Of a DNA stretch of 64,000 bases, positions 17,919-62,823 are shown piece by piece. A program made the position numbers and the translations under genes. The stretch spans positions 1-64,000 of the IMG/VR virus record IMGVR_UViG_3300036770_006296. The stretch is one strand, 5' to 3'. Under the pieces are notes generated by a model, which saw only the letters and a list, made by a program, of their open reading frames with translations, was not told the origin of the DNA and did not search any database. Position 1 is the first letter of the stretch. Every line of letters begins with the position of its first letter.

Positions 17919-18362
17919 ATGTTTGGCCCTATACAAAGTACCGCACTTTATCCGGTTTTACAACACTACACAGGATGTAAGATACATTCAATCTCACCAG
18001 ATGGGGATGATTTTTCATTTAGAACATTTCTAGGGGAAAGAGGAATACTTACTGAGGATACTACCGGAAATTGGAACATTACTATAGGAAAAGAGCTTGT
18101 ATACACGATCGAAAAGGATATCTTTAAGGTATTGATTAAGCCAGATAAAAAAAGCTCTTTAGAAGACTATATAGACATATTAAATGACTTAAATAACAAT
18201 CCAGACGTAAGCTATAGATCCAGGATTTTGGTAGCAAATATCATGAAATTTTTAGAGGAATATATAATAAGTTCTGATTTTGTCCCAAAGAAAAATTTAA
18301 GGATAGGACATCTTTTGATTTGTAATTTAAAAGGTAGAAAAATTATTAATTGTTTAAACTAA
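17919..18362 (+). CDS. Hypothetical protein
   Basis: 147-aa ORF in a tight operon arrangement. Confidence 0.5.
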   Translation: MFGPIQSTALYPVLQHYTGCKIHSISPDGDDFSFRTFLGERGILTEDTTGNWNITIGKELVYTIEKDIFKVLIKPDKKSSLEDYIDILNDLNNNPDVSYRSRILVANIMKFLEEYIISSDFVPKKNLRIGHLLICNLKGRKIINCLN

Positions 18363-20365
18363 TGGCTGGAATAAAATATTTAACGGACATATACGAAAAA
18401 AAAGGAAAGTCCTTTATTGAAAGCCTTTTCAATAAAAATTTAACTGTAACGGAAAATCTAGACGGTCCTTCTTTTTCTTTTGAAAGAGATTTTACTGGCG
18501 ATAACATATCTTTCTATAAAAAGGATCAAGATAATCCTATAACCAAGGTGGATAGGATATTAATGAGATATTACGAAAAGCCCATAAGCTATATAGAATC
18601 TCTATCTCTTGAAATCACAGATCAACTTCCTAAGGGATGGAGATTCGGAATGGTTTACTTTCCTAACAAAAAGCCAGTCAGAATTGAATACGATAGGATA
18701 CCAAAGAATCATCTTGTTTTAACACATGTTGTTGTTAGGGATGAATTTGGTGATATCATTAAAAATTTACAGGATAGGAATGAGCTCGATGAATGGGCGG
18801 ACAAGCTAGGAGTTGAAAGATCACCTATTATATTCCAAGGTAAACTTGATAGGGATCAAAAGATAGCTATAATGGATTTCCTTTCCACCCCATTAGCAGA
18901 TCTTAAAAATAAATTCCAGACCTCTAGTTTTAGTAACTATCTAATTTCAATCTTAAATAAAAAAGTAGAAAGAACAACACTTGGTAAGGATTTACAAGGT
19001 GAGATAGATTCCCTAGTTTTTAGATTCGAGGATGAAGACGGAAAAGAGGAAACTGTTTTAGCAAAAATGGTTGACCCTATTTTTCATGAGATAAACAGAA
19101 GCAGAAAAGTTACTCAAACATCTTATTTTCCTAGTGATGTTTATTCTTTGTGTCTTATAGATGTAATGAATTTTATACTAGAGACAGGAGTAGAAAACTT
19201 TATGGCTGAAGGCAATGATCCAGAGGAAAGATACATCAGTTTTGTTTTTGATGTATTTAAGAAGTTTGTATACGAGGAGGGTGAGAAATATGTAGGTGCA
19301 GATTTTCAAAAACCAGAATACTTGAAAACCGAAGGATTTGAAATAAATAAGGATTTAATAACTGACGAAGAAATTTTAAAGTCTATAGAAGACGACGAAG
19401 TTTATATAGACATTCTACAAATGATCCTTAACTCTTTTAGAAAGCTTAAAAGAAAACCACATGGATTTTTTACAGAGGGGCTAATCCAGCAATTTAATAT
19501 GCTAGTTGAAGATATTGCTAGCTATATAAACGCCAAAAAGAAAGATTTAGTTGAAGAGTCTTTAGGAGTTCCCAGCTTTGTTTGGTTTAAAAAAGTCGGT
19601 AGTAAATTTAATCCGATAATGAGTGACGAGGATGAAATAGACGAACTAGAAGAAATCATAGAAGGTTCTTCTTCTGGAGATGTTCTACCTCTTAATGAAT
19701 CTGAAATCCCAGAGACTATAACTGAAGACGAGAAGAAAGAAGACGCTTCAGAATTTTTCTCATTTAAGGATTTTAAAAAGGTAGTAGCTACACACAAAGA
19801 AAAAAAGAAGATAAAGATATTAAACGAGAATAGCCAGAAGGTAAATATTGTAATAGGTAAATTTCAGCCATTTAACAATGGGCATTTAAAAATGTGTACA
19901 AGATTAAAGAAGGAAAACAATTTACCGGTATTTCTATGTGTAGTACATCCTGGAAGTGAGCCAGGATCTAAATATCCATTCTCTGAGGATTTAATAAAAA
20001 AATCTATAGGTGCTTTAACATCAGAGAACAACAAACTTTTTGCTGGATATGAAATAATTCCGTCCAACCTTTTGGAGGATGCTCTAAATGCAGTAGTAAA
20101 ACATGCTAATCCTGCTTCTATATGTATAGGGGAAAGGGATTTTGAAAATATGATTCTTCAAAGAGAATGGGTAAGAAATAAATATGATTTAGAAGGAGGA
20201 GATATAGAAATATACAAAACACCGCAATGGTCAAATAATAATGATATTAGAACCTATATAAAAGATGGGGATTTCCAGCAATTTAAAAGTAAAGTCCCTA
20301 AATCTGTAGCGGTTCTTTTCAATGAATTTACTAAACAAATAAACGGATCCGAGAAGGATATATAA
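18350..20365 (+). CDS. Fusion of an RNA-ligase-like nucleotidyltransferase fold (degenerate) and a HIGH-superfamily cytidyltransferase-like domain
   Basis: N-terminal VTENLDG in the position of ligase motif I (K-x-D-G), and later IDSLVFRF/LAKMVD. C-terminal IVIGKFQPFNNGH resembles GRFQPxHxGH. Confidence 0.6.
   Translation: MFKLMAGIKYLTDIYEKKGKSFIESLFNKNLTVTENLDGPSFSFERDFTGDNISFYKKDQDNPITKVDRILMRYYEKPISYIESLSLEITDQLPKGWRFGMVYFPNKKPVRIEYDRIPKNHLVLTHVVVRDEFGDIIKNLQDRNELDEWADKLGVERSPIIFQGKLDRDQKIAIMDFLSTPLADLKNKFQTSSFSNYLISILNKKVERTTLGKDLQGEIDSLVFRFEDEDGKEETVLAKMVDPIFHEINRSRKVTQTSYFPSDVYSLCLIDVMNFILETGVENFMAEGNDPEERYISFVFDVFKKFVYEEGEKYVGADFQKPEYLKTEGFEINKDLITDEEILKSIEDDEVYIDILQMILNSFRKLKRKPHGFFTEGLIQQFNMLVEDIASYINAKKKDLVEESLGVPSFVWFKKVGSKFNPIMSDEDEIDELEEIIEGSSSGDVLPLNESEIPETITEDEKKEDASEFFSFKDFKKVVATHKEKKKIKILNENSQKVNIVIGKFQPFNNGHLKMCTRLKKENNLPVFLCVVHPGSEPGSKYPFSEDLIKKSIGALTSENNKLFAGYEIIPSNLLEDALNAVVKHANPASICIGERDFENMILQREWVRNKYDLEGGDIEIYKTPQWSNNNDIRTYIKDGDFQQFKSKVPKSVAVLFNEFTKQINGSEKDI
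20357..20365 (+). promoter_or_regulatory. Putative late promoter GATATATAA overlapping the upstream stop codon
   Basis: The motif ends in the TAA of the preceding gene and precedes the peptidase gene. Confidence 0.55.
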
Positions 20366-20382: not shown

Positions 20383-21243
20383 ATGAAAAGAATATTATCC
20401 TTTAATGACTTTGCAATTTTTGAATATAACACTTTTAACTACACTCCAGGAGATAAGTTAAATGAAGCTATATACCTAGACGAAAGAGAGAAAAGACCAG
20501 TAGACGAAGCGGCACTCAAGAAAATGAAAGCCTGCGTGTTTTTCTTAAACGGATCTTATCCGTTTTTTTCATCAATGCTATCTAGATTGATAATCAGAGA
20601 AAACAGAAATCTTAGATTTAAAACAATGGCAACTGACGGTGTTAGTATACACTATGATCCTGATTTTGTAAATGAGCACAGCGATGCAGAGATAATGTGG
20701 GTAATAGCACATGAGGTTTTACATAATACTCTACTTCACTTCCTAAGATGCCCTAAAGATAAAACTAAAGCGGGTGTATGGAATGTTGCAGCAGATTATG
20801 CACTTAACCAGGTATTAACTCCGATAGACCCAGGAACAATAAACACCGCTAAACCTGAACCTGTATCTAAGGGAGGAGTAGGAAAAATGGTGAAGGGTTC
20901 TTTATATCCAGGATGCGGGCACGTTTCTTACGATCGTGAGTTTGTTAACAGAAGTGCAGAATGGATATACGAAAAACTTTTAGCTAATGGATATGTTCCT
21001 GAGCCAGGTGAAGATACACCACCACCCCCACCACCCCCACCACCTCCACAGGATCCTGTAGTTGGTGATATCATATATGATAAAGATAATGATTCTTATG
21101 GTATAATTAAATCTATAGACGATTCTTCAGGCGAGCTTGAGTATGATCCTATACCTAAAAATAAGGTTAAAGAATACTTACAAAGAAAAGCTAAGGGTGA
21201 GAATATATTGGGAGACGATATAGAAAAAGAATTAGACTTCTAA
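20383..21243 (+). CDS. DUF2201-N-like HExxH metallopeptidase (stand-alone N-half)
   Basis: TMATDG..IHYDPDFV, VIAHEVLHNTLLH and WNVAADYALNQ, then a poly-Pro linker and a short SH3/KOW-like C-terminus. CTS-like N-terminus MKRILSFNDF. Confidence 0.8.
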   Translation: MKRILSFNDFAIFEYNTFNYTPGDKLNEAIYLDEREKRPVDEAALKKMKACVFFLNGSYPFFSSMLSRLIIRENRNLRFKTMATDGVSIHYDPDFVNEHSDAEIMWVIAHEVLHNTLLHFLRCPKDKTKAGVWNVAADYALNQVLTPIDPGTINTAKPEPVSKGGVGKMVKGSLYPGCGHVSYDREFVNRSAEWIYEKLLANGYVPEPGEDTPPPPPPPPPPQDPVVGDIIYDKDNDSYGIIKSIDDSSGELEYDPIPKNKVKEYLQRKAKGENILGDDIEKELDF

Positions 21244-21256
21244 TTTAATACGTTCT

Positions 21257-22240
21257 ATGAAAGCTAAGATAACTGACGTTAAAATACAAAAACTCCAGGA
21301 AGATGGAGGAGGGGGAGGAGGAAAGGGCCCAAGGAATCCTAAAAATGTAGAAGTTTGGCCAGGAGATGTTAATGATGTACCGGATAGGGACGAAGATGGA
21401 AACATCAAAGGAGATGACGTAGAAGGAGATTTTAAAAGATATTCCGGACCTAAAACAGATCCTGGATATAATCCAGGAGAAGTACTTAGACCTGGAGAAT
21501 TAGGGGATGTTGGAGATGGTGGAAATATAGACCCAGATAAGATAGCTGAGGAATGGGATGATATAACTAGAATAGCAACCACGGGAGGAAGTGCTCAACC
21601 ACCTCCTTCTATAAGAAGAGCTTTAACTAAACTAAAAGAGCCTGTTATTGACTGGAGAGCTGAGTTGGATAAATTTATAGATCAGGCAATATCCAAATCT
21701 AAGTACACATTGCCGGTTAGAAGATTTTTAGGAGCTGGGAAAGCACAGTATGGATATAAGAAATATAAAGAGGATTTTCAAAATATAGTTATTGCTATAG
21801 ATACATCCGGTTCTATTATTGATCCTTTATTAAAACAATTTATTTCAGAGGTCATTAAAATAACCGAAATATACAAACCCGATGAAACGACAATAATATA
21901 TTGTAGCGACAATATAGATAATATAGATACATTCGGTGTGGGTGAAGAGCCAGATTTAAATAAGATAGCATCAACTGGAGGAAACTATGAAGGATTCCAT
22001 CCACCTTTTAAATGGGTACAAAAAAATATGATTGACGAGGGAAAAACACCTTCGGTTTTTATTTATTTTACTGATGGATATGCAGATTTTCCACCACCCG
22101 AATATTATGATATAGAGAATTATTCAGATAGGTGTATTTGGGTACTCATTTCTTTTAATGATGAACCATTTCCTAGACCCGTTCCTTTTGGTGAAAGAAT
22201 AGATATAGTTTTAGCCAATAATAACGTAAAAAGAATTTAA
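21257..22240 (+). CDS. VWA-domain protein (DUF2201 C-half-like), copy A
   Basis: IDWRAEL, MIDAS motif AIDTSGSI, and TGGN...IYFTDG. Confidence 0.8.
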   Translation: MKAKITDVKIQKLQEDGGGGGGKGPRNPKNVEVWPGDVNDVPDRDEDGNIKGDDVEGDFKRYSGPKTDPGYNPGEVLRPGELGDVGDGGNIDPDKIAEEWDDITRIATTGGSAQPPPSIRRALTKLKEPVIDWRAELDKFIDQAISKSKYTLPVRRFLGAGKAQYGYKKYKEDFQNIVIAIDTSGSIIDPLLKQFISEVIKITEIYKPDETTIIYCSDNIDNIDTFGVGEEPDLNKIASTGGNYEGFHPPFKWVQKNMIDEGKTPSVFIYFTDGYADFPPPEYYDIENYSDRCIWVLISFNDEPFPRPVPFGERIDIVLANNNVKRI

Positions 22241-22243
22241 TCT

Positions 22244-23251
22244 ATGAAAGCAAAAATAACAGGCGTAAGAATTCAGCAAATGAAAGAATCCGGTGGTGGT
22301 GGTGGGGGAGGAGACGTAGAGGGGGACGACTTCGGTATCAGAAATCCTGAAAATGTCGACGAGTGGAAAGACGATGTTCCTGATGGGGATACTCCTGAAA
22401 GAGACAAAGATGGTAAAATAAAAGAGGAGGATTCCGAGTTCAAAAGATCTGATAGATCCGGAGGTGGTGGAGGTCCAGCTCCTGACGGATACAATCCTGG
22501 TGAAGTTCTTAGACCTGGGGAGTTGGGGGATCTTGGTGGAGACAGTGGACTTAACGGAGAAGCATTAGCTGAAGAATGGGAAGATATTACTAGAATAGCT
22601 GCAGCAGCGGGTAACGTTCCAGCATCTATAAAAAGAGCACTGACCAAAGTTAAAAGACCTGTTATTGATTGGAAGGCTGAATTAGCTAAGTATATAGACG
22701 AGGCAATAGCTAAATCTAAATATACATTACCAGCTAGAAGATTTTTAGGAGCGGGAAAAGCACAATATGGATATAAGAAATACAAAGAGGATTTCGAAAG
22801 CGTGGTTGTTGCAATAGATACTTCCGGATCTATCACTAGAGAAATGATAGAACAATTTTTAGGGGAGGTTATGAATATAACACAAGCATATACCCCTAAG
22901 AAAACCATTATATTATACTGCGACACCCAAGTTTACGAGCCGGATATATTAGAGCCAGGAGACACTCCTGATTTTAATAAAATAGCCGGAGGTGGTGGAA
23001 CATATTTTTGGCCTCCATTCAAATGGGTAGAAAGAAATTTAATAGAAGAAGGCGAAAAACCGACAGTATTTATATACTTTACTGACGGTGAAGCAAACTT
23101 CCCGTCTGCGGATGACTATGAGATTTCTCAATATGAAAATAGATGTATTTGGGTATTTCTCACATTTAATGATGAACCCTATCCAAACCCGCAACCTTTT
23201 GGCGAGAGAATAGACATAGTACTTGCCAATAAGAATGTAAAAAGAATATAA
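22244..23251 (+). CDS. VWA-domain protein (DUF2201 C-half-like), copy B; tandem paralog
   Basis: AIDTSGSI, GGGGT.F and IYFTDG; long near-identical blocks shared with copy A (e.g. RRFLGAGKAQYGYKKYKEDF, YNPGEVLRPGELGD). Confidence 0.8.
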   Translation: MKAKITGVRIQQMKESGGGGGGGDVEGDDFGIRNPENVDEWKDDVPDGDTPERDKDGKIKEEDSEFKRSDRSGGGGGPAPDGYNPGEVLRPGELGDLGGDSGLNGEALAEEWEDITRIAAAAGNVPASIKRALTKVKRPVIDWKAELAKYIDEAIAKSKYTLPARRFLGAGKAQYGYKKYKEDFESVVVAIDTSGSITREMIEQFLGEVMNITQAYTPKKTIILYCDTQVYEPDILEPGDTPDFNKIAGGGGTYFWPPFKWVERNLIEEGEKPTVFIYFTDGEANFPSADDYEISQYENRCIWVFLTFNDEPYPNPQPFGERIDIVLANKNVKRI

Positions 23252-23284: not shown

Positions 23285-24889
23285 ATGGGCAAAAGAATTT
23301 ATAATTTTAACGAGTTTGTCAATGAATCCTATATGAGTGAGGGATTTTTCTCTGATTTGGGATCGAAAATATCATCATGGGCAAAAAGTTTATATAATGC
23401 AGTTAAGTCAGGATTAGTTAGATTGATATCATCAGGACCTAAGAAAGGAACCCCTAGGGTGGCATTGTTTGACGATAGCAAGAGTGATTCAATCTTAAAT
23501 CAGGTTAACAATTTCTACAAAGGTACTGAATTCTATAATATGAATAACCTTGAGATCCCTGAGACCCTTGAAGAAAGCTTCTTATGGGAAGATGCAGTTC
23601 CTTTAACTTATCCTATAGAAGACGACGTACCAAACTATTCTGAACAGGAGATAAAAGAGACTATTAAAAGAAACATGAGAGATATCTTTAGAATTGCAGA
23701 TGAAATGGAAGCAGCTAAAGAATCTGGAGCATCTGATGACGAGTTAGATGATATTTACAGAGGAATTCTAGATGTTAAACCAATATTCATATACGGAGCT
23801 CCAGGGATTGGTAAAACTCAAATAGTAGCCCAAGTTTGTGACGAATTAGGAAAAGAATTATACGGACATAAACTATCTTTAGTTAACGTAGATGGTGAGA
23901 ACGCAGAGCCTGTTGATTTTGCTGGGGTACCTAGTGTAGTAGATATTGAATCACCAAATGAAGAAAACCCAATTGGAAGAGGTGTTACCAGATCTAATAT
24001 TAATGTTGATATACTCCCTTATGATAACGGAAAAAATCAAAAAGGGGGAATCCTATTCATCGACGAGTTAAACCGTATGCCTAAAGAAGTTATTAAGATA
24101 TTTATGAAACTTGCTCAGTCCAGAAGAATCGGTAACAATTATAAGGTTCCTTCTAGATGGTATATCGTTGCAGCAGGTAACCGAAAAGAAGATGATAGAG
24201 GAAATATCGAAGAATTAGGTACTGCTCTTAGAGACAGATTCGAAGCTGTTAACTTTGTACCAACTATAAAAGGATTTAGAGGATATATCGAGGGAAGCAG
24301 ATACAAAGACGTTGTTCTTCCAGAGCTTCTAGATTTCTTAGAATTCCAGCCAGTATACTTCCATAATTTGGATCCGGCTCTTAAGAAAACAAAATATCCA
24401 ACTCCTAGGGCTTGGGTAGATGCTTCGAACTCTTTAAGAAGAGTTATTAGAGAATTGGAAGCTAAAGGAGTTACAAAGATTCCGGAAGATGTGATAAGAA
24501 AAGAATTCTCTAAAAATGTTGGATATGATGCAACATCAGCTTTCTTGAATTTCTACAAGATTGCTAAAGATATTCCAGTAAAAGATCTTATTCTACCTTA
24601 CACGGATCCCGATAAAGCTCCAGTTCCTGCGGATAAAGGGGATAGACCAGATTATACACACGCTTTATTTGGAGCGGTTATGAGAAAAAGCACAGAGATG
24701 CAATTAACACCTAAAGAGGTTTGTAATTATGCTAAATGGTTAGAAAGAATTGATAAAGAGGAAGAAGGAGCAGCACAGATTACAACTTTCTTTAAGCTTC
24801 ATCCAGAATTGGCAAAAGATCCTGCAATGTACTCTTGCTTAGGACCTTTGGCTGATAAATGGGGAGCTAAAGTTGGACAAGAGTTCTAA
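23285..24889 (+). CDS. MoxR-type AAA+ ATPase, locus 1
   Basis: Walker A GAPGIGKT, Walker B ILFIDE, AAGNR, ALRDRF and PTPRAW. CTS-like N-terminus IYNFNEFVNES. Confidence 0.85.
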   Translation: MGKRIYNFNEFVNESYMSEGFFSDLGSKISSWAKSLYNAVKSGLVRLISSGPKKGTPRVALFDDSKSDSILNQVNNFYKGTEFYNMNNLEIPETLEESFLWEDAVPLTYPIEDDVPNYSEQEIKETIKRNMRDIFRIADEMEAAKESGASDDELDDIYRGILDVKPIFIYGAPGIGKTQIVAQVCDELGKELYGHKLSLVNVDGENAEPVDFAGVPSVVDIESPNEENPIGRGVTRSNINVDILPYDNGKNQKGGILFIDELNRMPKEVIKIFMKLAQSRRIGNNYKVPSRWYIVAAGNRKEDDRGNIEELGTALRDRFEAVNFVPTIKGFRGYIEGSRYKDVVLPELLDFLEFQPVYFHNLDPALKKTKYPTPRAWVDASNSLRRVIRELEAKGVTKIPEDVIRKEFSKNVGYDATSAFLNFYKIAKDIPVKDLILPYTDPDKAPVPADKGDRPDYTHALFGAVMRKSTEMQLTPKEVCNYAKWLERIDKEEEGAAQITTFFKLHPELAKDPAMYSCLGPLADKWGAKVGQEF

Positions 24890-47756: not shown

Positions 47757-49250
47757 ATGTCTAAAAGAATAAAAAATTTCTCAGATTTTGTTAATGAATC
47801 ATACAGTCCTTCAAAATTAGACGAAGGGTTTCTTTCAACTATAAAGGATTATGCAAAAAGATTTTTTGGTTGGACTGGTAAATTTTTAAAGAGTCTAGCA
47901 CAGGGATTAATAGAGCCTATTCCTTATGGTCCTAAGAAAGGACTTCCTACTATTATGCTTTTCTTACCTGAAAATGGGTCTATCTACAAACAGATGACAG
48001 AATTTGAAATGGGTGTTAATCCTATAAAAGAAGCAAGGATACCTTTGGAATATACAGGAGAAGATCAGAGTGTAAGAAACATCTCTGCTGATCAATTAAA
48101 GCAAGATGTAATAAGATTATATAGAAGTAAAGAAAGAGGTGGTAGGGCTAAGCCTATCTTTATTTACGGAGCTCCTGGTATTGGTAAAACAGAAATAGTC
48201 GGACAAGCAGCTGATGAATTGGGTGTTCCGGTAATGAAGCTAGATTTACAATTTATGAATCCGGAGGATTTCTTAGGTATTCCTAGTAGACACGATATAG
48301 AGCCAGTTCAGGTAGAAGGTGGAAAATTGATTAGTTCAGGTAAAGGATTTACAAGATCTAATCCACCAATTTTACTTCCAACTGACAACGGTAATGAAGA
48401 TAGAGGAGGTATAATATTTATGGATGAGATGAACAGAGCTAATAAAGCAGTTCTTAACTCCATTATGCAATTTGTACAAAAAGGAGAAATAGGTCCTTAT
48501 AAATTACCAGATAGATGGGTGATTGTAGCAGCTGGTAACAGACCAGAAGAAGCTGAAGGTGTTGCTGATTTCGACTTTGCATTAGCAGACCGATTCACTA
48601 TTAAAAACTACGTCCCTACAATCGAGGGATATGCTTCTTGGGCTGATAAGAACGAAAAGATCCTTCCAGAGTTAGTTACTTTCTTAACGTTTAACCAAGA
48701 TTACTTCCATAATCTAGATGCCGATAAAAAATCTCTTAACTATCCTACGCCTAGATCTTGGACCGACGGAGCATTAATACTCCACGACGAGATCCAATAT
48801 AAAGGAGTAGATTCTTGGAGAGATATTTCTAGGCAAGATATATTAGACATCTTCTACGATCAAGTTGGTCCCGAAGCAGCTGGTAAATTTGTAGCTTACT
48901 TAGACATTTTAAGAAAAGTTACGGATTCTGATATGGAAGATATGATCAACAATCCTATGTCTGCTAAAATGGTACCAGAGGCACAATCCACAAAGAGCGT
49001 ACTTTATGGACTTATAGAAATGGTGATGAAGAGAGTTAAATCGTATGACACACAGAAATTCTATAACGTTATGGAGTATTTCAATAGATACAACGAGCTG
49101 GAACCGCTAAGCTGGCTATATAAAGATATCTTATCTAAATATCCTCAGTTCAAATTTGGAGGAAGTTCTAACACTCCGGAGGATGAATTAAAACACAAAG
49201 CAGCCTTAATGATTACAAAAGGAGCTAAAGATAAAGGTCTACAAGGATGA
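47757..49250 (+). CDS. MoxR-type AAA+ ATPase, locus 2
   Basis: GAPGIGKT, IIFMDE, AAGNR, ALADRF and PTPRSW; leader IKNFSDFVNES; shares a GPKKG-containing N-domain with the locus 1 ATPase. Confidence 0.85.
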   Translation: MSKRIKNFSDFVNESYSPSKLDEGFLSTIKDYAKRFFGWTGKFLKSLAQGLIEPIPYGPKKGLPTIMLFLPENGSIYKQMTEFEMGVNPIKEARIPLEYTGEDQSVRNISADQLKQDVIRLYRSKERGGRAKPIFIYGAPGIGKTEIVGQAADELGVPVMKLDLQFMNPEDFLGIPSRHDIEPVQVEGGKLISSGKGFTRSNPPILLPTDNGNEDRGGIIFMDEMNRANKAVLNSIMQFVQKGEIGPYKLPDRWVIVAAGNRPEEAEGVADFDFALADRFTIKNYVPTIEGYASWADKNEKILPELVTFLTFNQDYFHNLDADKKSLNYPTPRSWTDGALILHDEIQYKGVDSWRDISRQDILDIFYDQVGPEAAGKFVAYLDILRKVTDSDMEDMINNPMSAKMVPEAQSTKSVLYGLIEMVMKRVKSYDTQKFYNVMEYFNRYNELEPLSWLYKDILSKYPQFKFGGSSNTPEDELKHKAALMITKGAKDKGLQG

Positions 49251-50308
49251 GAAAGCTAAACGAAAACAAATATAAAACCGGAAAAGTAATAACATCTTTC
49301 TCTAATTATGTTAGATTCATAAACGAATCATCCTTATATGATCCGGATGAGGTCAACAAAAAAATAAGAAGGGTTATACTTTGGTTAAATATAAACCAGG
49401 GATTTTATGCTGAGCTTCTTAGCCATGTAAATATATTTGGATCTAGCGATCTTAATCCTAAAACAATGTGTACAAACGGTAGGGATATAATATTCCATCC
49501 TGAATTTGTTATGAGACAATCTGAGCCAGCTTTGAGATTTGTCCTTTGTCATGAAATATTACATTGCATAGGTGATCATATGAATAGGAGAGGAAGCAGA
49601 GATCCTATGGGATGGAACATAGCTTGTGACTATGCAATAAATCCATTACTCAAGGATGAAGCCGGATTCGAATTTCCCGTAGATGAAAACGGTAATAGAG
49701 AAGGATTATATGATTCAAGGTTCGAAGGGATGAGGGCAGAAGACATATATGATGCACTAGAAGAATCAGGAGAACTGAAAAAATTAATAGGAGACTCTAA
49801 AGTACAAAAGACTGTAGAGACTACAGGTAAAGTTGAAGATGAGGATAAAGAATTAGCAGACCCTGACGAAGAAATGGTGATACAAAAAGGGGATGACCCA
49901 GGAGAAGAGGGAGAAGATGGAGAACCAGGAGAAGATGGAGAACCAGGAGAAGATGGAGAGCCAGGAGAAGATGGAGAACCAGGAGATCAGCCAGGAGATC
50001 AGCCAGGAGATCAACCAGGAGATCAACCAGGAGATCAACCAGGAGATCAACCAGGAGACCAGCCAGGAGATCAACCAGGAGATCAACCAGGAGATCAACC
50101 AGGAGATCAACCAGGAGATCAACCAGGAGATCAACCAGGAGATCAACCAGGAGATCAACCAGGAGATCAACCAGGAGATCAACCAGGAGATCAACCGGGT
50201 GGAGATAAAAAGAGTCTTCCAAGAGTTGGCCAGAAGGTAATAACAAAAGACGGAAGGGAAGGAACTATAACTAAGGTTTATCCTAACGGAGATATAGAAA
50301 TTTCTTAA
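49247..50308 (+). CDS. DUF2201-N-like HExxH metallopeptidase (stand-alone N-half) with a repeat linker, locus 2
   Basis: TMCTNG..I.FHPEFV, VLCHEILHC..DH and WNIACDYAINP, then (GEDGEP)4(GDQP)18 and an SH3/KOW-like C-terminus. Confidence 0.8.
   Translation: MRKLNENKYKTGKVITSFSNYVRFINESSLYDPDEVNKKIRRVILWLNINQGFYAELLSHVNIFGSSDLNPKTMCTNGRDIIFHPEFVMRQSEPALRFVLCHEILHCIGDHMNRRGSRDPMGWNIACDYAINPLLKDEAGFEFPVDENGNREGLYDSRFEGMRAEDIYDALEESGELKKLIGDSKVQKTVETTGKVEDEDKELADPDEEMVIQKGDDPGEEGEDGEPGEDGEPGEDGEPGEDGEPGDQPGDQPGDQPGDQPGDQPGDQPGDQPGDQPGDQPGDQPGDQPGDQPGDQPGDQPGDQPGDQPGDQPGDQPGGDKKSLPRVGQKVITKDGREGTITKVYPNGDIEIS
49910..50197 (+). repeat. In-frame tandem repeats: 4 x 18 nt (GEDGEP) then 18 x 12 nt (GDQP)
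   Basis: Units ggagaagatggagaacca (49910-49981) and ggagatcaacca (49982-50197), with only synonymous variation. Confidence 0.95.
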
Positions 50309-50310
50309 TT

Positions 50311-51249
50311 ATGTTTATAAAAAACGGAGATTATTCAGTAGTATCTGACGACAAGAATAAAGAAAATGGAAAACCTGGGGATCAAAGAAAATCTTCTGGA
50401 GGAGAGGCCGAATTTTCAGATACCCCTGAGACAATGACTGACATACCTAAAGTGGGTCAAGAAACTCCTGGTATAAAAACATTCAGAGATTTTGAGGGAC
50501 CACAAGATTCCAAGGAAAAAGCTAAAGAGATAAAACCTAATAAGCCATCTAAAATATTTAAGGGTGATCTTCCAAAAAGAAATTGGCAGGATATAGCTAA
50601 TCAGGCTATGTCTAGAAATAAAGTTAGTGACAAAGCTAAAAGACTAATAAAAGCTTTAAAAACCAGTGAGCCTTTAGTTGATTGGAAGAAAGAGCTTAAA
50701 AAATTCTTTGATAACACTTTTAAATCCGATGAATGGGTTCTTCCTAATAAAAGATTCCTTGCTGGAGGTGACATGATATACGGGAGAAGAAACGTAGGTG
50801 ATGACACTTTAAAAACTATAGTTGCCGCAGTTGATACATCTTCATCTATTTCAAAAGAACAGATAAAGGTATTTATCAACGAAATAATGTATCTCACAAA
50901 AACATTTGATGCTGATAAAACTATAATCATATACTGTAGTGATCATATAGACAATATTGATATAGTTAAAAAGGGAGGATCTCCAGATCTAACAAAGATA
51001 GCTTCAACCGGTGGAAACGCGGAAGGATTTATACCGCCATTTCAGTGGGTAGAAAAAAATAAGATCAAGCCATCCGCATTTATTTATTTAACAGACACAG
51101 GAGGAGAAATGCCAGACCCTAGTAAATATGGTATAAATAAATACAGAAAGAAGGTGCTTTGGTTTATATGTTCTCCTGAAATGTATAATCCACCATCCTT
51201 CGGCAAGATACTTTTTGCCCCTGTGGGATCCATAAAAGTTAAAAGATAG
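50311..51249 (+). CDS. VWA-domain protein (DUF2201 C-half-like), locus 2
   Basis: VDWKKEL, AVDTSSSI, TGGNAEGF and IYLTD. Confidence 0.8.
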   Translation: MFIKNGDYSVVSDDKNKENGKPGDQRKSSGGEAEFSDTPETMTDIPKVGQETPGIKTFRDFEGPQDSKEKAKEIKPNKPSKIFKGDLPKRNWQDIANQAMSRNKVSDKAKRLIKALKTSEPLVDWKKELKKFFDNTFKSDEWVLPNKRFLAGGDMIYGRRNVGDDTLKTIVAAVDTSSSISKEQIKVFINEIMYLTKTFDADKTIIIYCSDHIDNIDIVKKGGSPDLTKIASTGGNAEGFIPPFQWVEKNKIKPSAFIYLTDTGGEMPDPSKYGINKYRKKVLWFICSPEMYNPPSFGKILFAPVGSIKVKR

Positions 51250-58014: not shown

Positions 58015-58521
58015 ATGAGTTCAATAAAAAGATTTGAACAGTTTCTTAATGAAGAAAAATGGATCAAAGGCGCTATAGAACATCCAGGAGCTCTTAGAAG
58101 ACATTTTCATAAGAAGGAGGGAGAAAAGATCACTAAAACTGAAATAGGTGATGAAATTGCCGATCTTATGAGAAAAGATATGGACAAGAAAAAACCTGGT
58201 GCTCAGTTAGGTAAAAGAGATGCTACTCTTTACAAAAGACTTCAATTAGCAAAAACCCTCAGAGGTATGAATGAGGATCACGATGAGATGGATAATTATA
58301 TGTTCTTTGCAAATGTTTCTAATATAAAAAGAATGTGTGAGGAGATATTACAAATGGATCCTTCACAAGTTGATTCGCTTCTTAGTGACGGACACGGATG
58401 GGCTACTGATCACATAGCAACTTCTAAAGATGATGTTGAAGAAGTTTATGGATTTTTAAAATCCTCAATGGAATTACATCATGATGAAGAGGGAATGATC
58501 TCCGATGGAGAGGAATGTTAA
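58015..58521 (+). CDS. Hypothetical protein with CTS-like N-terminus
   Basis: MSSIKRFEQFLNEE leader; basic KWIKGAIEHPGALRR domain; internal MNE site; acidic C-domain. Confidence 0.55.
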   Translation: MSSIKRFEQFLNEEKWIKGAIEHPGALRRHFHKKEGEKITKTEIGDEIADLMRKDMDKKKPGAQLGKRDATLYKRLQLAKTLRGMNEDHDEMDNYMFFANVSNIKRMCEEILQMDPSQVDSLLSDGHGWATDHIATSKDDVEEVYGFLKSSMELHHDEEGMISDGEEC

Positions 58522-58537
58522 GATAAAAAATAAAAAA

Positions 58538-60694
58538 ATGAAATACCTTTCTTTATTTGATGATTATAAATTATCCGAAGAAGAATCCTACCTGTTTGAT
58601 AATGATTCATTGTTTGAGTCTAAAATAAACCAGATGATGTCACTTAGACAAAATGGGTGTGCAGCTGGTATGGATCTTAATGAATTTAAGTCAGCTTTTA
58701 GAAGAGATTCTTTACTTGAGAATAGGGGATATGAAGAATCTGAGGCCTTATTAGAAAAAGCCCATAGCGTATATGAACTAGGAATGCTACAAGAATCTAA
58801 ATCACATTGGTTTGATGATGATAAACCCCTTATGTATGAACACTCCAAGGGGGTTATTTCTTATCTAGAATTTGAAGGTAATATACTTTTATTTAAAGAG
58901 GGTGAAGCTTTTGCAATCACTGAAAAATCGCTAAGGATGCTTAAAGATAACGATCAATCAATCAATGAGGATCTTTTTAATGAAGTGATAGGAGGTAAAT
59001 TATATGAGTATTCATTTAGCGATTTCTGTGGAGATGTGTGGAGTGGAGTAAAATCAGGAGCTAAATGGGTAGACAGAAACATAGTGCAGCCTGCTAAAAA
59101 AGTTGTTACTGAATATGTAATAGATCCTTTAAAACAATTGTGGGATAATCTAACTGATGGCGCTAAAAAACTTTACCAATTTGCCAAGAAAGTTATGAAT
59201 GCTATAGCATCTTTTGTTTCTGAGAATTGGCAAGACATTCTATTCTATGTTTCTGTCGCTTTACAGGTTATTGCCGGTATAATAGCTTTTATTCCTGCAG
59301 CTGGTCAAGTCGCAGGACCTGTTCTGTTGATAATAGCAGGAGCTATACAAATAGGAACCGGAGCGTATGATATTTACGAAGGTGTAAAAATAACGAGAGA
59401 GTGCCCAACTGATCCTATAAAAAAAGCTGCACCGGAATTTATAAAAGGTGGAGCTAAACTTCTGGGAGGTGGTGTTAGTTTGTTATTAGGTATACACGAT
59501 GTATCTACTAGTGCTAAAGCAGCAATACCAGGAGCAGCAGCTACCAGTACTGCAGTTGCAGTTCCTGCAAAGGCTTGGGTTAAAACAACTACTGCAGGAT
59601 TAAGCAAGGCTGGAGCAGCTGTGGGTATGTTCGAAACCCTTATTAAATTTTTAATTGATTCTGCTGGAACTGCTGCTAGTAAAGCCGTTACCAAAAAAGT
59701 AGCAACTACCGGCGGAAAATATGTTGCACAGAAAACTTCACTACTAGCTGGTGAAGCCCTAACTAAAGCAGGAGCTGAGATACTGGGAAAAAAATTAGGG
59801 GATAAAGCTAATGAATCTGCAATTCCTATGTTATGTATAGCTGGACAATACGCTTTAGGGTGGTTATGGGACATTATATTATCTGCAGTTTCTGGAATAG
59901 GTAAATTAATTAATGGCATACTGGATTTACCAACTAGAACAGTTAAAGCCATAGACAATTTTAATAGAGAATATTCCGATAGTGCATTTGGATGGATAGT
60001 AGGAGGAGCATTAAAGCTTTTTGTGAAACCAGTTGCTAAAGTTCTCTCCTGGTTTTGTGAAAATAAAATAAAACCCTTAGTTAAGCCCGTTACTGACTGG
60101 ATGATTGGATTAGGTAAACATAACAAATCCATAAAGCAATCAGTGGAGGGTAACGCATCTTTAAAAGCTGCAGTTAGCGGAGGAAAAATACCTCAACCTA
60201 AGGGAGGAATACCACAAGAAAAAGTTACTGTAACAGAAAAAGATAAAAGTAATCTTGCTAAAATAATGGCGTCTGAATCTGGGAAAGCTTCAGATAAATC
60301 CATAGCTAAATCAAGTGGATTTTACAATGAAAAATTCAAGAAAATTCAATCGGATATACAATCGAAGATTAAGAAACAACAGGAAAAACTTTATAAAGAT
60401 AAATTCCCAGGCATTTTAAAGAATGAAGCTAAAGGTAAATGGCACACCCTAAAGGATGGAACTTTATGTTTCGAATTTAAATCAGATTCTGCAAAAGGCT
60501 CTGTAATACTTTATAATAACGGCAGGTATATGGTTAGCGACGGTCCTAATAAAGGGGCCAAAGGAAACTATACAGCAAAAAATAATATCGATATACAACC
60601 ACCTAAAGGAGGATTTAAGAATCCAAAGAAGGAAGGCAAGAAGAACGAATCTAGAAACTATATAAGAACTTTCGAATCCTTCTCTTTCTCCTAA
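58538..60694 (+). CDS. Large CTS-tagged protein with hydrophobic/amphipathic helices, paralog A (ejection/pore-forming candidate)
   Basis: MKYLSLFDD leader (ATG at 58538); W-spaced amphipathic helices; TM-like ILFYVSVALQVIAGIIAFIPAAGQVAGPVLLIIAG. Confidence 0.5.
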   Translation: MKYLSLFDDYKLSEEESYLFDNDSLFESKINQMMSLRQNGCAAGMDLNEFKSAFRRDSLLENRGYEESEALLEKAHSVYELGMLQESKSHWFDDDKPLMYEHSKGVISYLEFEGNILLFKEGEAFAITEKSLRMLKDNDQSINEDLFNEVIGGKLYEYSFSDFCGDVWSGVKSGAKWVDRNIVQPAKKVVTEYVIDPLKQLWDNLTDGAKKLYQFAKKVMNAIASFVSENWQDILFYVSVALQVIAGIIAFIPAAGQVAGPVLLIIAGAIQIGTGAYDIYEGVKITRECPTDPIKKAAPEFIKGGAKLLGGGVSLLLGIHDVSTSAKAAIPGAAATSTAVAVPAKAWVKTTTAGLSKAGAAVGMFETLIKFLIDSAGTAASKAVTKKVATTGGKYVAQKTSLLAGEALTKAGAEILGKKLGDKANESAIPMLCIAGQYALGWLWDIILSAVSGIGKLINGILDLPTRTVKAIDNFNREYSDSAFGWIVGGALKLFVKPVAKVLSWFCENKIKPLVKPVTDWMIGLGKHNKSIKQSVEGNASLKAAVSGGKIPQPKGGIPQEKVTVTEKDKSNLAKIMASESGKASDKSIAKSSGFYNEKFKKIQSDIQSKIKKQQEKLYKDKFPGILKNEAKGKWHTLKDGTLCFEFKSDSAKGSVILYNNGRYMVSDGPNKGAKGNYTAKNNIDIQPPKGGFKNPKKEGKKNESRNYIRTFESFSFS

Positions 60695-60720
60695 GGAATA
60701 TATAAAGTAAAATGATAAGA

Positions 60721-62823
60721 ATGAAATACCTATCACTATTTGATGATTTTGACCAAATTGAAGAATCATACTCCTTTGATAACGATTCCTTATTAGAATC
60801 AAAATTGAATCAGATGAGTTCGCTAAAAGAAAGCTGCATGGCAGCATGGGACTTTGGAACATTTAGTGATTTTTTCAATGGATTCATTAATGAGAGCGTA
60901 TCTGATATCGAAAGAGAATTACTTTTAGAAAAAGCATATTACACATATGAGTTAGGCGTATTATACGAGCACAATAAAGATTGGTTTAATAGCAAGGATA
61001 ATATCTACTATCTGGAAGACAATTCTAATGATGTACCAAGGGCTATTCTTTTTAAAGATAATAGATTACATATAATATCCGGTGAAACTATATCCAAATT
61101 AAAAGAGGGATTAGATACTCTTAATGAGGGATTTTTTGGGGATTTAATAGACGGAGCAGCCAATCTAATAGGAAAAGGAGTAAAGGCAGTTAAAGGAGCT
61201 GTTAAAAAATACGTAGTGGAACCCGTCAAGAAAGCAGCTGCTTATGTTGGTGACAAGGTATCTAAAGCTTGGGATGCTTTATCAAGTGGAGCTAAAGCCG
61301 TTTGGGAATTTGGTAAAAAAATAGCTTCTGCAGTTGCTGCTTTTGTTAGCGAGGATCCAATAAATGCAATAGCAATAGGATTAATGATTATATCTGGTAT
61401 AATCTCTTTTATACCTGCTGCAGGTACAGTTATTGGACCAGTCCTCATGGTGATAGCAGGAGTTTTACAGCTATATACAGGAGGAAGAGATTTAGTAAAA
61501 GCTAGTAAAGAGGTGGGATCAGCAGAAAAGGTTGTTGATATATTAAAAGGAGGCACCAAAATTATATTTGGGTCTGCTAGCTTATTGTTAGGAATAAAAG
61601 ATATTGTAACATCAGCTGCATCTGCCCTTCCCGGAATGGGAGCAACCGGCGTTGCTATAAAATCATCAGTTACTAGCTGGGCAACAAACTTCAGTAAAAC
61701 TGCTTTTGGCGCACCTGCAAGTAAAGGAATAGGAGCAGCTTTAGGATGTTCCGCTTGGATTTCTGAATTTTTCTCTACCCTCTGTCTTAATGCTCCCTTT
61801 ATGAAAAAATTTGTAGATGTGGCAGCAGATGGTTCTAAGGTTATAAATAAAAAATGGCTGGATGTAGGAACCAAAATTGCTAATGCAGGAGCAGGAAAGG
61901 GTGTAGAAGCCGTAACTGCTACAGATAAAAAACAAAATGCAAGTCTAGATTTAGACTCATATAACAATCATTTGGACGAAGATAAAGGCGGGGGATCATG
62001 GGGATTCGGAGAACTTGTAGTAAACTTCCTAGCCTATGTGGGAAAAGCATGTTTCTCGTGGTTATTTAAAGCTATTACCGGTGCTTTATCAGGGATAGGC
62101 AAGCTTATAAATGGAATAATGGATCTTCCCTCGAGAATAACAAAGGGAATAGATTCATTTAGAGAAAAATATAAATCATCCTTCATAGGAGGTATTCTAT
62201 CAGGGGCTCTTGCAACATTTGTAAGACCTTTTTCTAGCGTTGCATCTAAAGTGATAGATGGATATGTTAAACCAATAGTTAAACCGGTTACAGGTTGGAT
62301 GATAGATCTTGGTAAAAAAGAGGCATCTATTTCAGCTAAAATAAAAGCTAATCCAGTACTGGCAAAACCTCCTATACCAGGAGTAAAAGACCCAGGTAAA
62401 GTAACTATCCCACAGAAAAAAGTTGAGATATCACCTAAAGATCAGGCAGCTATAAAGAAAATCGGAGTTACTGGAGTAAAAACAATGGTTAAATCTGGAG
62501 GTGGATCGGAAAAAATGGTGGAAAAGATCAACAAAGCTCAGGATGAATTCAAAAAGAAATTTCCTGGGGTTTCTAAAGAAAAAGGATCCTGGGGACAAAG
62601 TCCTAGCGGTAAAGCAACTTACACCATAAAATCAAAAGAAGCAGAAGGCTCAGTTACCCTGTTCAATGACGGTAAATACACAGTTGTAACAGGTCCCAAC
62701 AAAAAAGCTAGAGGGGAATTTAAAGCCGACAAGGGAATAAAATTGATGGAGCCTAAGGATGGATGGAAGAAAAAGAATGAATCTAGAAGATATGTTCTAC
62801 CTATAAATTCTTTCTTGGGTTGA
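60721..62823 (+). CDS. Large CTS-tagged protein with hydrophobic/amphipathic helices, paralog B
   Basis: MKYLSLFDD leader; IAIGLMIISGIISFIPAAGTVIGPVLMVIAG; colinear similarity to paralog A; preceded by GAATATATAA (60696-60705). Confidence 0.5.
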   Translation: MKYLSLFDDFDQIEESYSFDNDSLLESKLNQMSSLKESCMAAWDFGTFSDFFNGFINESVSDIERELLLEKAYYTYELGVLYEHNKDWFNSKDNIYYLEDNSNDVPRAILFKDNRLHIISGETISKLKEGLDTLNEGFFGDLIDGAANLIGKGVKAVKGAVKKYVVEPVKKAAAYVGDKVSKAWDALSSGAKAVWEFGKKIASAVAAFVSEDPINAIAIGLMIISGIISFIPAAGTVIGPVLMVIAGVLQLYTGGRDLVKASKEVGSAEKVVDILKGGTKIIFGSASLLLGIKDIVTSAASALPGMGATGVAIKSSVTSWATNFSKTAFGAPASKGIGAALGCSAWISEFFSTLCLNAPFMKKFVDVAADGSKVINKKWLDVGTKIANAGAGKGVEAVTATDKKQNASLDLDSYNNHLDEDKGGGSWGFGELVVNFLAYVGKACFSWLFKAITGALSGIGKLINGIMDLPSRITKGIDSFREKYKSSFIGGILSGALATFVRPFSSVASKVIDGYVKPIVKPVTGWMIDLGKKEASISAKIKANPVLAKPPIPGVKDPGKVTIPQKKVEISPKDQAAIKKIGVTGVKTMVKSGGGSEKMVEKINKAQDEFKKKFPGVSKEKGSWGQSPSGKATYTIKSKEAEGSVTLFNDGKYTVVTGPNKKARGEFKADKGIKLMEPKDGWKKKNESRRYVLPINSFLG

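What the first reader, a model, noticed from the sequence alone, without database searches (positions are those of the whole stretch)
21050..21300. Both peptidases end in a truncated SH3/KOW-like barrel at the split point, a possible strand-complementation docking site
The locus 1 peptidase ends VVGDIIYDKDNDSYGIIKSIDDSSGELEY.., and the locus 2 peptidase ends RVGQKVITKDGREGTITKVYPNGDIEIS*. Each is about three strands of an SH3-like fold placed after a long spacer. The cognate VWA proteins begin with a short beta-prone peptide followed by a flexible linker (MKAKITDVKIQ, MKAKITGVRIQ, MFIKNGDYSVV). That peptide could complete the barrel and non-covalently re-join the split protein. ORF 27089 carries a similar but apparently more complete domain (VGKRVSLIDGRSGRV...).
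Basis: inference. Interest (0 to 1): 0.6.

Follow-up and report, generated by a model that had tools for sequence, protein, structure and literature searches.

The report
Split KOW clasp joining phage proteins
In this large phage, a protease-plus-adaptor protein that is normally one chain is encoded as two genes, and each half carries one piece of a tiny beta-barrel (KOW type) that most likely snaps together to re-join them; I found no published description of such a natural clasp.

Summary
The window is the first 64 kb of a 206.6 kb phage record. It holds two MoxR-ATPase / zincin-peptidase / VWA modules of the DUF2201 family, and in both the usually fused peptidase-VWA protein is split into two genes.

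- **Locus 2:** the peptidase ends, after an 18-copy tandem-repeat spacer, in a 28-residue tail. Homologous tails hit Pfam KOW above its cut-off but cover only the first half of whole-domain KOW profiles. The stop codon lies 2-5 residues after an invariant G-D-I in 117 homologs.
- **Partner peptide:** 108 of 109 partner VWA proteins begin with a roughly 12-residue hairpin-like motif followed by a low-complexity linker.
- **Fused relatives:** tail and hairpin are absent from 43 fused homologs and from 84 fused viral ORFs, including a fused trio in the same clade.
- **Adaptor genes:** two lineages insert a small gene made of hairpin plus tail between the peptidase and the VWA gene.
- **Structure predictions:** the hairpin is disordered when folded alone. 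The tail-hairpin complex prediction gave only weak support (0.38 against 0.02 for controls).
- **Locus 1 (the flagged coordinates):** it has a different, conserved tail of three strands plus a helix and its own conserved N-peptide. Its binding was not tested.
- **ORF 27089:** the claimed resemblance is not significant.

Verdict: a docking clasp is likely; barrel completion is plausible but unproven.

The parts
20383..21243 (+). Locus 1 zincin peptidase (P0001, 286 aa), the N-terminal half of a split DUF2201 protein. It has an HExxH motif at H110/E111/H114.
   Evidence: PF13203 at 67 bits, profile positions 10-134. H110, E111 and H114 are invariant in A2 and A5.
21019..21057 (+). Proline-rich spacer in front of the locus 1 tail
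   Evidence: A 9-nt tandem repeat lies at 21019-21049. The translation shows a poly-Pro run. The pLDDT dips to 54 in this block.
21058..21240 (+). Locus 1 C-terminal tail (residues 226-286): three beta strands (to nt 21153), a helix (21157-21192) and a short extension
   Evidence: AF2 predicts E230-233, E238-245, E252-257 and H259-270 at pLDDT 77-85. G228, G240 and D246 are conserved across 79 homologs. The type-1 tail HMM hits only this ORF in the 206 kb record.
21257..22240 (+). Locus 1 VWA protein a (P0002, 327 aa). The N-peptide is residues 1-16 (21257-21304) and is followed by a Gly run.
   Evidence: PF09967 at 48 bits plus the end of the PF13203 profile. The N-peptide motif is conserved in all type-1 partners.
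22244..23251 (+). Locus 1 VWA protein b (P0003, 335 aa), a tandem paralog 59% identical to P0002. It has a near-identical N-peptide (22244-22291) and a Gly run.
23285..24889 (+). Locus 1 MoxR-like AAA+ ATPase (534 aa)
   Evidence: AAA_5 at 38 bits and AAA at 29 bits. The same gene order is seen in L091-L109.
47757..49250 (+). Locus 2 MoxR-like AAA+ ATPase (P0008, 497 aa)
   Evidence: AAA_5, AAA and bpMoxR. phrog_1297 at E 4.6e-52.
49247..50308 (+). Locus 2 zincin peptidase (P0004, 353 aa), the N-terminal half of a split DUF2201 protein
   Evidence: PF13203 at 87 bits, profile positions 14-184. A1 shows H102, H106 and H111 invariant and E103 nearly invariant.
49901..50196 (+). Low-complexity spacer encoded by tandem repeats (18-nt x 4.3 and 12-nt x 18.3). 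Its length varies between relatives.
   Evidence: TRF. Relatives are 300-370 aa long with differing repeats.
50222..50305 (+). Locus 2 KOW half-domain tail (residues 326-353, about three strands). The stop codon follows directly.
   Evidence: Invariant G, V, G and G-D-I. Homologous tails hit PF00467 above its cut-off and only the first half of the whole-domain KOW profiles. The type-2 tail HMM hits only this ORF in the record.
50311..50349 (+). N-terminal hairpin-like peptide of the locus 2 VWA protein (residues 1-13), the proposed strands 4-5
   Evidence: The motif is present in 108 of 109 full-length partners. G6 is nearly invariant. pLDDT is below 50 when the protein is folded alone. The hairpin HMM hits only this site in the record.
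50311..51249 (+). Locus 2 VWA protein (P0005, 312 aa)
   Evidence: PF09967 at 52 bits plus the end of the PF13203 profile.

Best explanation
Both loci encode a MoxR AAA+ ATPase together with a DUF2201-type zincin-peptidase/VWA co-chaperone. In this phage lineage that co-chaperone has been cut into two genes inside its variable linker.

The two products are held together non-covalently by a small clasp. The peptidase carries, at the end of a flexible spacer, the first three strands of a KOW/SH3-like barrel. The VWA protein starts with a hairpin of about 12 residues, followed by its own flexible linker. Tail and hairpin pair by beta-strand complementation. In locus 2 this most likely forms one five-stranded KOW-like barrel. 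In locus 1 the N-peptide would add to a unit of three strands plus a helix. Either way the result is the tethered peptidase-linker-VWA architecture of the fused relatives.

The two loci use different tail/peptide types, which would keep the two machines apart. In locus 1, two VWA paralogs share one peptide type and could alternate on one peptidase.

Shown here: the split, the conservation of both elements, their restriction to split forms, the adaptor genes, and the disorder of the peptide when folded alone.

Inferred: physical binding, the barrel geometry and the specificity.
For: 1. The split is real and lies in the linker part of the PF13203 profile.
2. The type-2 tail is present in 117-119 of 120 peptidase homologs, and the protein always ends 2-5 residues after G-D-I. 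The tail is as conserved as the catalytic core, while the spacer is a fast-changing tandem repeat. Synonymous differences sit inside conserved tail codons.
3. Homologous tails pass Pfam KOW (29-31 bits against a cut-off of 22.3) but match only the first half of the whole-domain KOW profiles.
4. The hairpin motif is present in 108 of 109 full-length VWA partners. More than 27 distinct tail-hairpin neighbour pairs were read on contigs.
5. Neither element occurs in 43 fused homologs, and no tail occurs in 84 fused ORFs of viral loci, whereas 24 distinct split ORFs all carry a tail. This includes the fused trio P0212, P0221 and P0225. P0221 is 46% identical to the peptidase P0004 and 59% identical to the VWA protein P0005. 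The trio lies in the same SH-aLRT 98 clade as the split forms.
6. Adaptor genes exist. L017, L171 and L172 carry a 119-122 aa ORF made of leader, hairpin, linker and KOW tail between the peptidase and the VWA gene. L190 and L193 carry a 49-aa ORF made of hairpin plus a KOW tail (29.5 bits), with ATGA overlaps on both sides.
7. The N-peptide has pLDDT below 50 when P0005 is folded alone, so it does not pack on its own VWA domain.
8. The predicted complex of tail (P0004:318-353) with N-peptide (P0005:1-30) scored ipSAE 0.38 against a best control of 0.02, verdict 'weak support'. The runs agree in at least 97% of their contacts and the partner pLDDT is at least 62. The mark was reached by 58 of 80 solved complexes and by 2 of 110 mismatched pairs. 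At 0.60 or under, however, it was reached by only 7 of those 80 solved complexes and by both mismatches that passed. My own alignments were used, so these counts hold only roughly. Tail pLDDT was 76-77 with the cognate peptide against 62 with unrelated peptides. Peptide pLDDT was 62 against 44 with an unrelated chain 1.
9. Type 1: the tail and the N-peptide are conserved across 17 distinct split loci.
Against: - The complex prediction is only a weak pass. By the tool's own calibration such passes are more often wrong than right unless the prior is high, and no interface was returned.
- The window's own tails do not reach Pfam KOW.
- The hairpin shows no sequence likeness to the second half of any KOW profile.
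- The locus 1 tail is predicted with fair confidence without any partner. It may therefore be an autonomous mini-domain, and its pairing was not tested.
- The apparent covariation (E or I after G-D-I against Y or F in the hairpin, 29 of 30 concordant) rests on only 1-2 independent changes.
- Homology between the two tail types is not established.
- There is no experimental evidence of any kind.
Confidence: 0.6

Rival explanations
1. Tail and N-peptide are independent handles. Each binds a third partner, such as the MoxR hexamer, a capsid or scaffold component, or a substrate, rather than binding each other.
For: KOW and SH3-like modules are general protein- and nucleic-acid-binding modules (own knowledge). 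The complex score is only weak. The locus 1 tail is predicted folded without a partner.
Against: Fused relatives sit in the same clade and keep both the peptidase and the VWA domain, yet they lack both elements. That is unexpected if the elements served a third partner; whether these relatives sit beside a MoxR ATPase was not checked. The adaptor ORFs consist of exactly hairpin plus tail. Each element is single-copy per module in the 206 kb record.
Confidence: 0.2
2. The conserved ends reflect constraints at the nucleotide level, such as a ribosome-binding site, translational coupling or an RNA structure at the gene junction, and not a protein function.
For: The N-G-D codons are nearly identical in DNA in several relatives and contain GGAG. 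The locus 1 junction folds somewhat better than shuffled sequence (z -2.41).
Against: The GGAG lies 19 nt from the start codon. Intergenic spacing ranges from -8 to +17 nt, and the reading frames differ between relatives. Conservation covers about 28 and 12 residues at the amino-acid level, with synonymous changes. The locus 2 junction has no RNA structure signal (z -0.46).
Confidence: 0.07
3. The two ORFs are joined into one chain by recoding (frameshift or read-through) or by protein splicing, so no docking is needed.
For: The genes abut. In the window and in L011 the VWA gene is in the -1 frame relative to the peptidase.
Against: Across relatives the VWA frame is 0, 1 or 2, the gaps range from -8 to +17 nt, and each VWA gene has its own start codon. 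There are no intein-like end residues: the tail ends I-E-I-S and the VWA protein starts M-F or M-L.
Confidence: 0.03

Closest known systems
Fused MoxR AAA+ / vWA co-chaperone with an N-terminal metallopeptidase domain, described in group 2.2 jumbo phages (Iyer et al. 2021, Viruses 13:63, PMC7824862; Pfam PF13203 + PF09967)
   Same: It has the same domains (zincin peptidase, helical connector, VWA-like domain) next to a MoxR-type ATPase. It is also found in large phages.
   Different: Here the peptidase and the VWA domain are separate genes, and each carries an extra terminal element (KOW half-domain, hairpin) that the fused forms lack.
KOW motif / KOW domain (PF00467; NusG, Spt5, ribosomal protein L24)
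   Same: Homologous tails score 29-31 bits against the KOW motif with the conserved glycines.
   Different: Only about the first three strands are present in the chain. The protein ends where whole-domain profiles are half matched. The context is a protease tail, not transcription or the ribosome.
Docking domains at the C- and N-termini of PKS/NRPS subunits, including beta-hairpin docking domains (review PMC9113145)
   Same: Short terminal elements on consecutive gene products ensure ordered, specific non-covalent assembly (abstract seen). Here they likewise occur only where the chain is broken.
   Different: The fold and the enzymes are unrelated. Here the two elements look like two parts of one ancient domain.
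Donor-strand complementation in chaperone-usher pili, and engineered split domains such as split GFP and SpyTag-type tags (own knowledge)
   Same: An incomplete beta fold is completed by strand(s) supplied by another chain.
   Different: This would be a natural clasp of about 28 plus 12 residues on soluble phage proteins. The binding has not been shown.
Chromodomain-like peptide binding, in which three strands plus a helix are completed by a ligand strand (own knowledge)
   Same: The locus 1 tail is predicted as three strands followed by a helix.
   Different: No sequence or fold match was obtained. This is an analogy only.

Membership tests
DUF2201 MoxR-associated peptidase-VWA (PF13203 + PF09967) | Match to the metallopeptidase domain above the curated cut-off, with an HExxH motif | tested here: met
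   P0001 scores 67 bits and P0004 87 bits against a cut-off of 23.2. The HExxH motif is conserved: both His are invariant in both alignments, and the Glu is invariant in A2 and nearly invariant in A1.
DUF2201 MoxR-associated peptidase-VWA (PF13203 + PF09967) | Match to the VWA-like domain above the curated cut-off | tested here: met
   P0002 scores 48, P0003 68 and P0005 52 bits against a cut-off of 26.4.
DUF2201 MoxR-associated peptidase-VWA (PF13203 + PF09967) | An adjacent MoxR-type AAA+ ATPase | tested here: met
   ORFs 47757-49250 and 23285-24889 match AAA_5 and AAA.
DUF2201 MoxR-associated peptidase-VWA (PF13203 + PF09967) | Peptidase and VWA in one polypeptide, as described for jumbo phages | tested here: not met
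   They are separate ORFs with their own start and stop codons. Frames and gaps vary among relatives.
KOW (PF00467) | Profile match above the gathering score | tested here: inconclusive
   The window's own tails give no KOW hit at E up to 10. Alignable tails of homologs 43-48% identical in sequence score 29-31 bits against a cut-off of 22.3.
KOW (PF00467) | A complete five-stranded barrel within one chain | tested here: not met
   The tail is 28 residues long. It matches only positions 1-23 of 46 (KOW5_SPT5) and 3-32 of 55 (KOW4_SPT5), and the stop codon lies 2-5 residues after G-D-I.
Terminal docking elements of split multi-subunit proteins | Elements at the C-terminus of the upstream product and the N-terminus of the downstream product, present only when the chain is broken | tested here: met
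   All 24 distinct split ORFs in viral loci carry a tail, and none of the 84 fused ORFs or 43 fused homologs does. The hairpin is present in 108 of 109 split partners and in none of 43 fused homologs.
Terminal docking elements of split multi-subunit proteins | Physical, cognate-specific binding | tested here: inconclusive
   The predicted complex scored 0.38 against a best control of 0.02, verdict 'weak support'.
Split intein | Catalytic end residues (a C, S or T nucleophile at the junctions and a terminal Asn) | tested here: not met
   The tail ends I-E-I-S (or I, V, N, E in relatives), and the partner starts M-F, M-L or M-K.
Programmed frameshift or read-through fusion | A constant frame relation between the two ORFs | tested here: not met
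   The VWA frame relative to the peptidase is 0, 1 or 2, and the gaps range from -8 to +17 nt.

The most novel reading that the evidence does not exclude
Phages of this group use a family of natural split-KOW clasps: a tail of about 28 residues that pairs with a hairpin of about 12. These would act as modular, orthogonal heterodimerisation tags that wire together subunits of MoxR chaperone/protease machines. Under this reading there are at least two non-cross-reacting types in one genome, alternative clients on one hub (the two VWA paralogs of locus 1), and free-standing hairpin-linker-tail adaptor proteins that can extend the chain.
Probability: 0.4. Interest if true: 0.75.

Novelty: new variant of a known kind. 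Interest (0 to 1): 0.62.

Why it matters
If the clasp is real, it shows how a gene fission can be tolerated: each fragment keeps half of a tiny domain that re-associates. That makes the evolution of split genes directly testable in a family that has fused, two-part and three-part members.

It would also supply very small natural protein-protein tags, with two apparently orthogonal types in one genome. These could be useful for protein engineering.

Finally, it suggests that the phage MoxR-VWA-peptidase machine is assembled from exchangeable parts. That bears on its still unknown role, which has been proposed to be virion assembly (PMC7824862).

Tried and rejected
- **Pfam on the window's own tails and N-peptides:** no KOW hit. 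Only weak YajC (E 0.027) and chance hits came up.
- **ORF 27089 (P0006):** no Pfam family. The tail HMM gives E 0.62 over 14 positions. The Atlas search returned only its own unnamed viral cluster. The likeness was dropped.
- **Profile-profile comparison of the two tail types:** P 0.0026, probability 11.5%. This is too weak to claim homology.
- **Covariation between the residue after G-D-I and the hairpin aromatic residue:** 29 of 30 pairs are concordant, but there are only 1-2 phylogenetically independent pairs, so it is not testable.
- **Foldseek of the P0001 model against the PDB:** only weak matches of the peptidase core, to selecase (4qhi, E 8.9e-3) and to the SprT-type entry 6mdx. Nothing usable came up for the tail.
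- **PDB sequence search with the family profile:** nothing below E 0.38.
- **RNA structure at the junctions:** none at locus 2 (z -0.46). Locus 1 has a modest hairpin (z -2.41).
- **Recoding or intein explanations:** rejected on frames, gaps and end residues.
- **Literature searches:** they found the fused phage system (PMC7824862) and PKS/NRPS docking domains (PMC9113145), but no report of a split KOW clasp.
- **Not run because of job caps:** the locus 1 tail with its N-peptides, swapped pairs, and the adaptor proteins in complex prediction.
Full report
**What the window is.** The window is bases 1-64000 of a linear IMG/VR virus record of 206,617 bases, estimated 81% complete. It has about 34% G+C, and almost all genes lie on the + strand. 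It contains two modules of the same kind.
- Locus 1: peptidase 20383-21243 (P0001), VWA-a 21257-22240 (P0002), VWA-b 22244-23251 (P0003), AAA+ ATPase 23285-24889.
- Locus 2: AAA+ ATPase 47757-49250 (P0008), peptidase 49247-50308 (P0004), VWA 50311-51249 (P0005).

Pfam places the peptidases in PF13203 (DUF2201_N, 67 and 87 bits) and the VWA proteins in PF09967 (48-68 bits). The ATPases are MoxR-like. The peptidases stop at PF13203 profile positions 134 and 184, and the VWA proteins resume at about positions 163/196-261. The family's usual single chain is therefore cut inside its variable connector. The fused form beside a MoxR ATPase has been described in jumbo phages, where a role in virion assembly was proposed (PMC7824862, read).

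**The observation, locus 2.**
- P0004 ends with a spacer encoded by tandem repeats (an 18-nt unit x 4.3 and a 12-nt unit x 18.3), followed by a 28-residue tail and the stop codon.
- A word search found 346 relatives, and the best 120 listed are 280-390 aa long. Of these, 117 by a strict pattern (119 by eye) end with the same tail. The chain stops 2-5 residues after an invariant G-D-I, and in 114 of the 117 it stops after 2-3 residues.
- In an alignment of 20 diverse members, the tail's G, V, G and G-D-I are invariant. Its pairwise identity (0.52) equals that of the catalytic core (0.55), while the spacer is low-complexity and variable in length.
- Codon comparison with relatives shows synonymous differences inside conserved tail codons.
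- Tails of one subfamily are 43-48% identical to P0004 over the whole protein and alignable with it column for column. They reach Pfam KOW at 29-31 bits (cut-off 22.3). They cover only positions 1-23 of 46 and 3-32 of 55 of the whole-domain KOW profiles, because the protein ends there.

'Truncated KOW-like barrel' is thus a fair description, although the window's own tail does not reach the KOW threshold.

**The observation, N-peptides.**
- Of 109 full-length VWA relatives of P0005, 108 begin with the same motif of about 12 residues. The pattern is hydrophobic-hydrophobic-K-K/N/L-G-x-Y/F-x-hydrophobic-hydrophobic, and a low-complexity linker follows. The single exception is a near-match.
- Identity is 0.50 in the peptide, 0.26 in the linker and 0.65 in the VWA domain.
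- More than 27 distinct neighbour pairs of tail and hairpin were read on viral and metagenome contigs.
- The VWA start lies from -8 to +17 nt from the peptidase stop, and in all three frames. The two are therefore separate genes, not a recoded fusion.

**The observation, locus 1 (the flagged coordinates).**
- P0001 has a proline-rich spacer, then a tail with conserved G228, G240 and D246 across 79 homologs.
- AlphaFold2 with that alignment predicts three strands (230-233, 238-245, 252-257) followed by a helix (259-270) at pLDDT 77-85, then a poorly predicted extension.
- The protein therefore does not simply end after three strands. Many relatives do end just after the helix.
- All type-1 partners begin with their own conserved peptide, M-K-x-x-I/V-x-D/G/E-hydrophobic-R/K..., followed by a Gly- or Pro-rich linker. 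Both VWA paralogs of the window carry it.
- Likeness between the two tail types is weak (hhalign P 0.0026).
- ORF 27089 shares only the first 14 positions of the pattern (E 0.62). It has no family assignment.

**Evidence that tail and peptide belong together.**
1. *They occur only in split forms.*
   - HMMs of both tails find nothing in 43 fused homologs, and the hairpin HMM and a hairpin pattern also find nothing there.
   - Among distinct complete peptidase ORFs in viral loci, 84 are fused and lack a tail, and 24 are split and all carry a tail. Seven other ORFs were not classed. Six of these, 406-452 aa long, are most likely fused forms whose divergent VWA domain my HMM missed: two end in a typical VWA C-terminus, and the other four were not checked. 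One is a fragment.
   - The fused trio P0212, P0221 and P0225 are close kin. P0221 is 46% identical to P0004 in the peptidase part and 59% identical to P0005 in the VWA part. They lie in the same SH-aLRT 98 clade as the split forms, and they have an acidic linker but neither element.
2. *Adaptor genes exist.*
   - In L017, L171 and L172, which are independent contigs of 35, 69 and 188 kb, the peptidase ends in a type-1-like tail. A 119-122 aa ORF follows, made of a leader, a hairpin motif, a Gly/Pro linker and a type-2 KOW tail. The VWA gene with its own hairpin comes next.
   - In L190 and L193, a 49-aa ORF (L190:2524-2673) made of a hairpin motif, three connecting residues and a KOW tail (29.5 bits) sits between the peptidase and the VWA gene, with ATGA overlaps on both sides.
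   - Proteins built from only these two elements are hard to explain unless the elements are a matched pair.
3. *The peptide does not pack on its own protein.* In a model of P0005 alone, residues 1-32 have pLDDT below 50 while the VWA core reaches 80-92.
4. *Each element is single-copy per module.* Each HMM hits only its own site in the whole 206 kb record.

**The direct test.** I ran the predicted complex of the tail (P0004:318-353, 60-row alignment) with the N-peptide (P0005:1-30, 101-row alignment).
- The ipSAE score was 0.38 (three runs: 0.37, 0.38, 0.39) against a best control of 0.02. The verdict was 'weak support'.
- The runs agree in at least 97% of their contacts, and the partner pLDDT is at least 62.
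- The mark was reached by 58 of 80 solved complexes and by 2 of 110 mismatched pairs. At 0.60 or under, however, it was reached by only 7 of those 80 solved complexes and by both mismatches that passed.
- My own alignments were used, so these counts hold only roughly. No interface was returned.
- Both sides gained confidence with the cognate partner. The tail had pLDDT 76-77 against 62 with unrelated peptides. The peptide had 62 against 44 with an unrelated chain 1.

Given the comparative evidence the prior was high, so I read this as modest added support. It does not show the barrel geometry.

**Mechanism.** The most likely reading (confidence 0.6) is a docking clasp. Tail and hairpin associate by strand complementation and tether the peptidase to the VWA protein through two flexible linkers, which restores the fused architecture.
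- For locus 2, three strands plus two make a KOW-like barrel. This step is inferred.
- For locus 1, the N-peptide would add to a unit of three strands plus a helix, by analogy only. This was not tested.
- The helical end of the PF13203 profile now sits on the VWA chain. It may supply a second, native interface. This too is inferred.

The rivals are listed with their evidence: independent handles for a third partner (0.2), nucleotide-level constraints (0.07), and recoding or splicing (0.03).

**Comparison with what is known, and novelty.** The module is a member of the DUF2201/MoxR family except for the one-chain feature, which is not met. The tail is KOW-like by homology to tails that pass Pfam, but it is not a complete KOW domain. 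Functionally the pair works like the docking domains of PKS/NRPS subunits (PMC9113145) or like donor-strand complementation (own knowledge). Four literature searches found no report of a split KOW clasp or of the split form of this phage system. That is a limited search, not proof of absence. I rate it a new variant of a known kind.

**Limits.**
- There is no experiment.
- There was one complex job, and it gave a weak pass.
- The locus 1 and swapped pairs were not run.
- The covariation test is underpowered.
- The tree cannot say whether the fused trio is a re-fusion or an ancestral form.
- No alternative genetic code was named.

Noticed in passing
Whole record G000. In the window: ORF starts at 16456, 20383, 23285, 25165, 25694, 36615, 39331, 42740, 47757, 51251, 52617, 58015 and 62866: More than 35 + strand ORFs begin with a shared leader of the form M-K/R-x-I/L-K-x-F-E/N-x-F, often followed by N-E-S. 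Both peptidases and both AAA+ ATPases have it, and the three VWA proteins do not. In flavour it recalls the T4 capsid-targeting sequence and its cleavage motif (own knowledge). If so, the clasp could carry the VWA proteins along with the peptidases. This was not tested.
   Followed up: partly
L017:2498-4750; L171 and L172:2124-4472; L190:1583-3629; L193:833-2870: These are three-part versions of the split. A small ORF (119-122 aa or 49 aa) made of a hairpin motif plus a KOW tail lies between the peptidase and the VWA gene. This is seen in two separate lineages and on several independent contigs.
   Followed up: yes
window 21257-23251: Locus 1 has two tandem VWA paralogs (59% identical) with near-identical N-peptides and Gly runs. 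Relatives L091-L099 have a single VWA gene before the ATPase.
   Followed up: partly
window 49901-50196: The spacer of the locus 2 peptidase is a near-perfect tandem array (a 12-nt unit x 18.3 at 97% match, plus an 18-nt unit x 4.3). Its length and unit differ between close relatives, so linker length evolves fast.
   Followed up: partly
window 50430-50490 (P0005 residues about 41-60): There is a second conserved motif inside the VWA linker (M-x-x-I-P-x-x-G...G-x-x-T-x-R, with P46 nearly invariant). Its pLDDT is intermediate (54-68) in the model of the protein alone. It may be another contact site.
   Followed up: no
window 21190-21310: The locus 1 gene junction folds better than shuffled sequence (z -2.41; 5 of 200 shuffles fold as well). 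A small hairpin spans the peptidase stop codon.
   Followed up: no
window 18350-20365: The 671-aa ORF upstream of locus 1 has a weak cytidylyltransferase-like C-terminal part (Pfam E 0.007; phrog_395 E 3e-5). Its N-terminal two thirds match no family.
   Followed up: no
window 58505-62823 and 62866 onwards (G000 62866-66268): Two pairs of neighbouring ORFs (58505/60712 and 62866/64988) share closely similar N-termini. This suggests tandem gene duplications.
   Followed up: no
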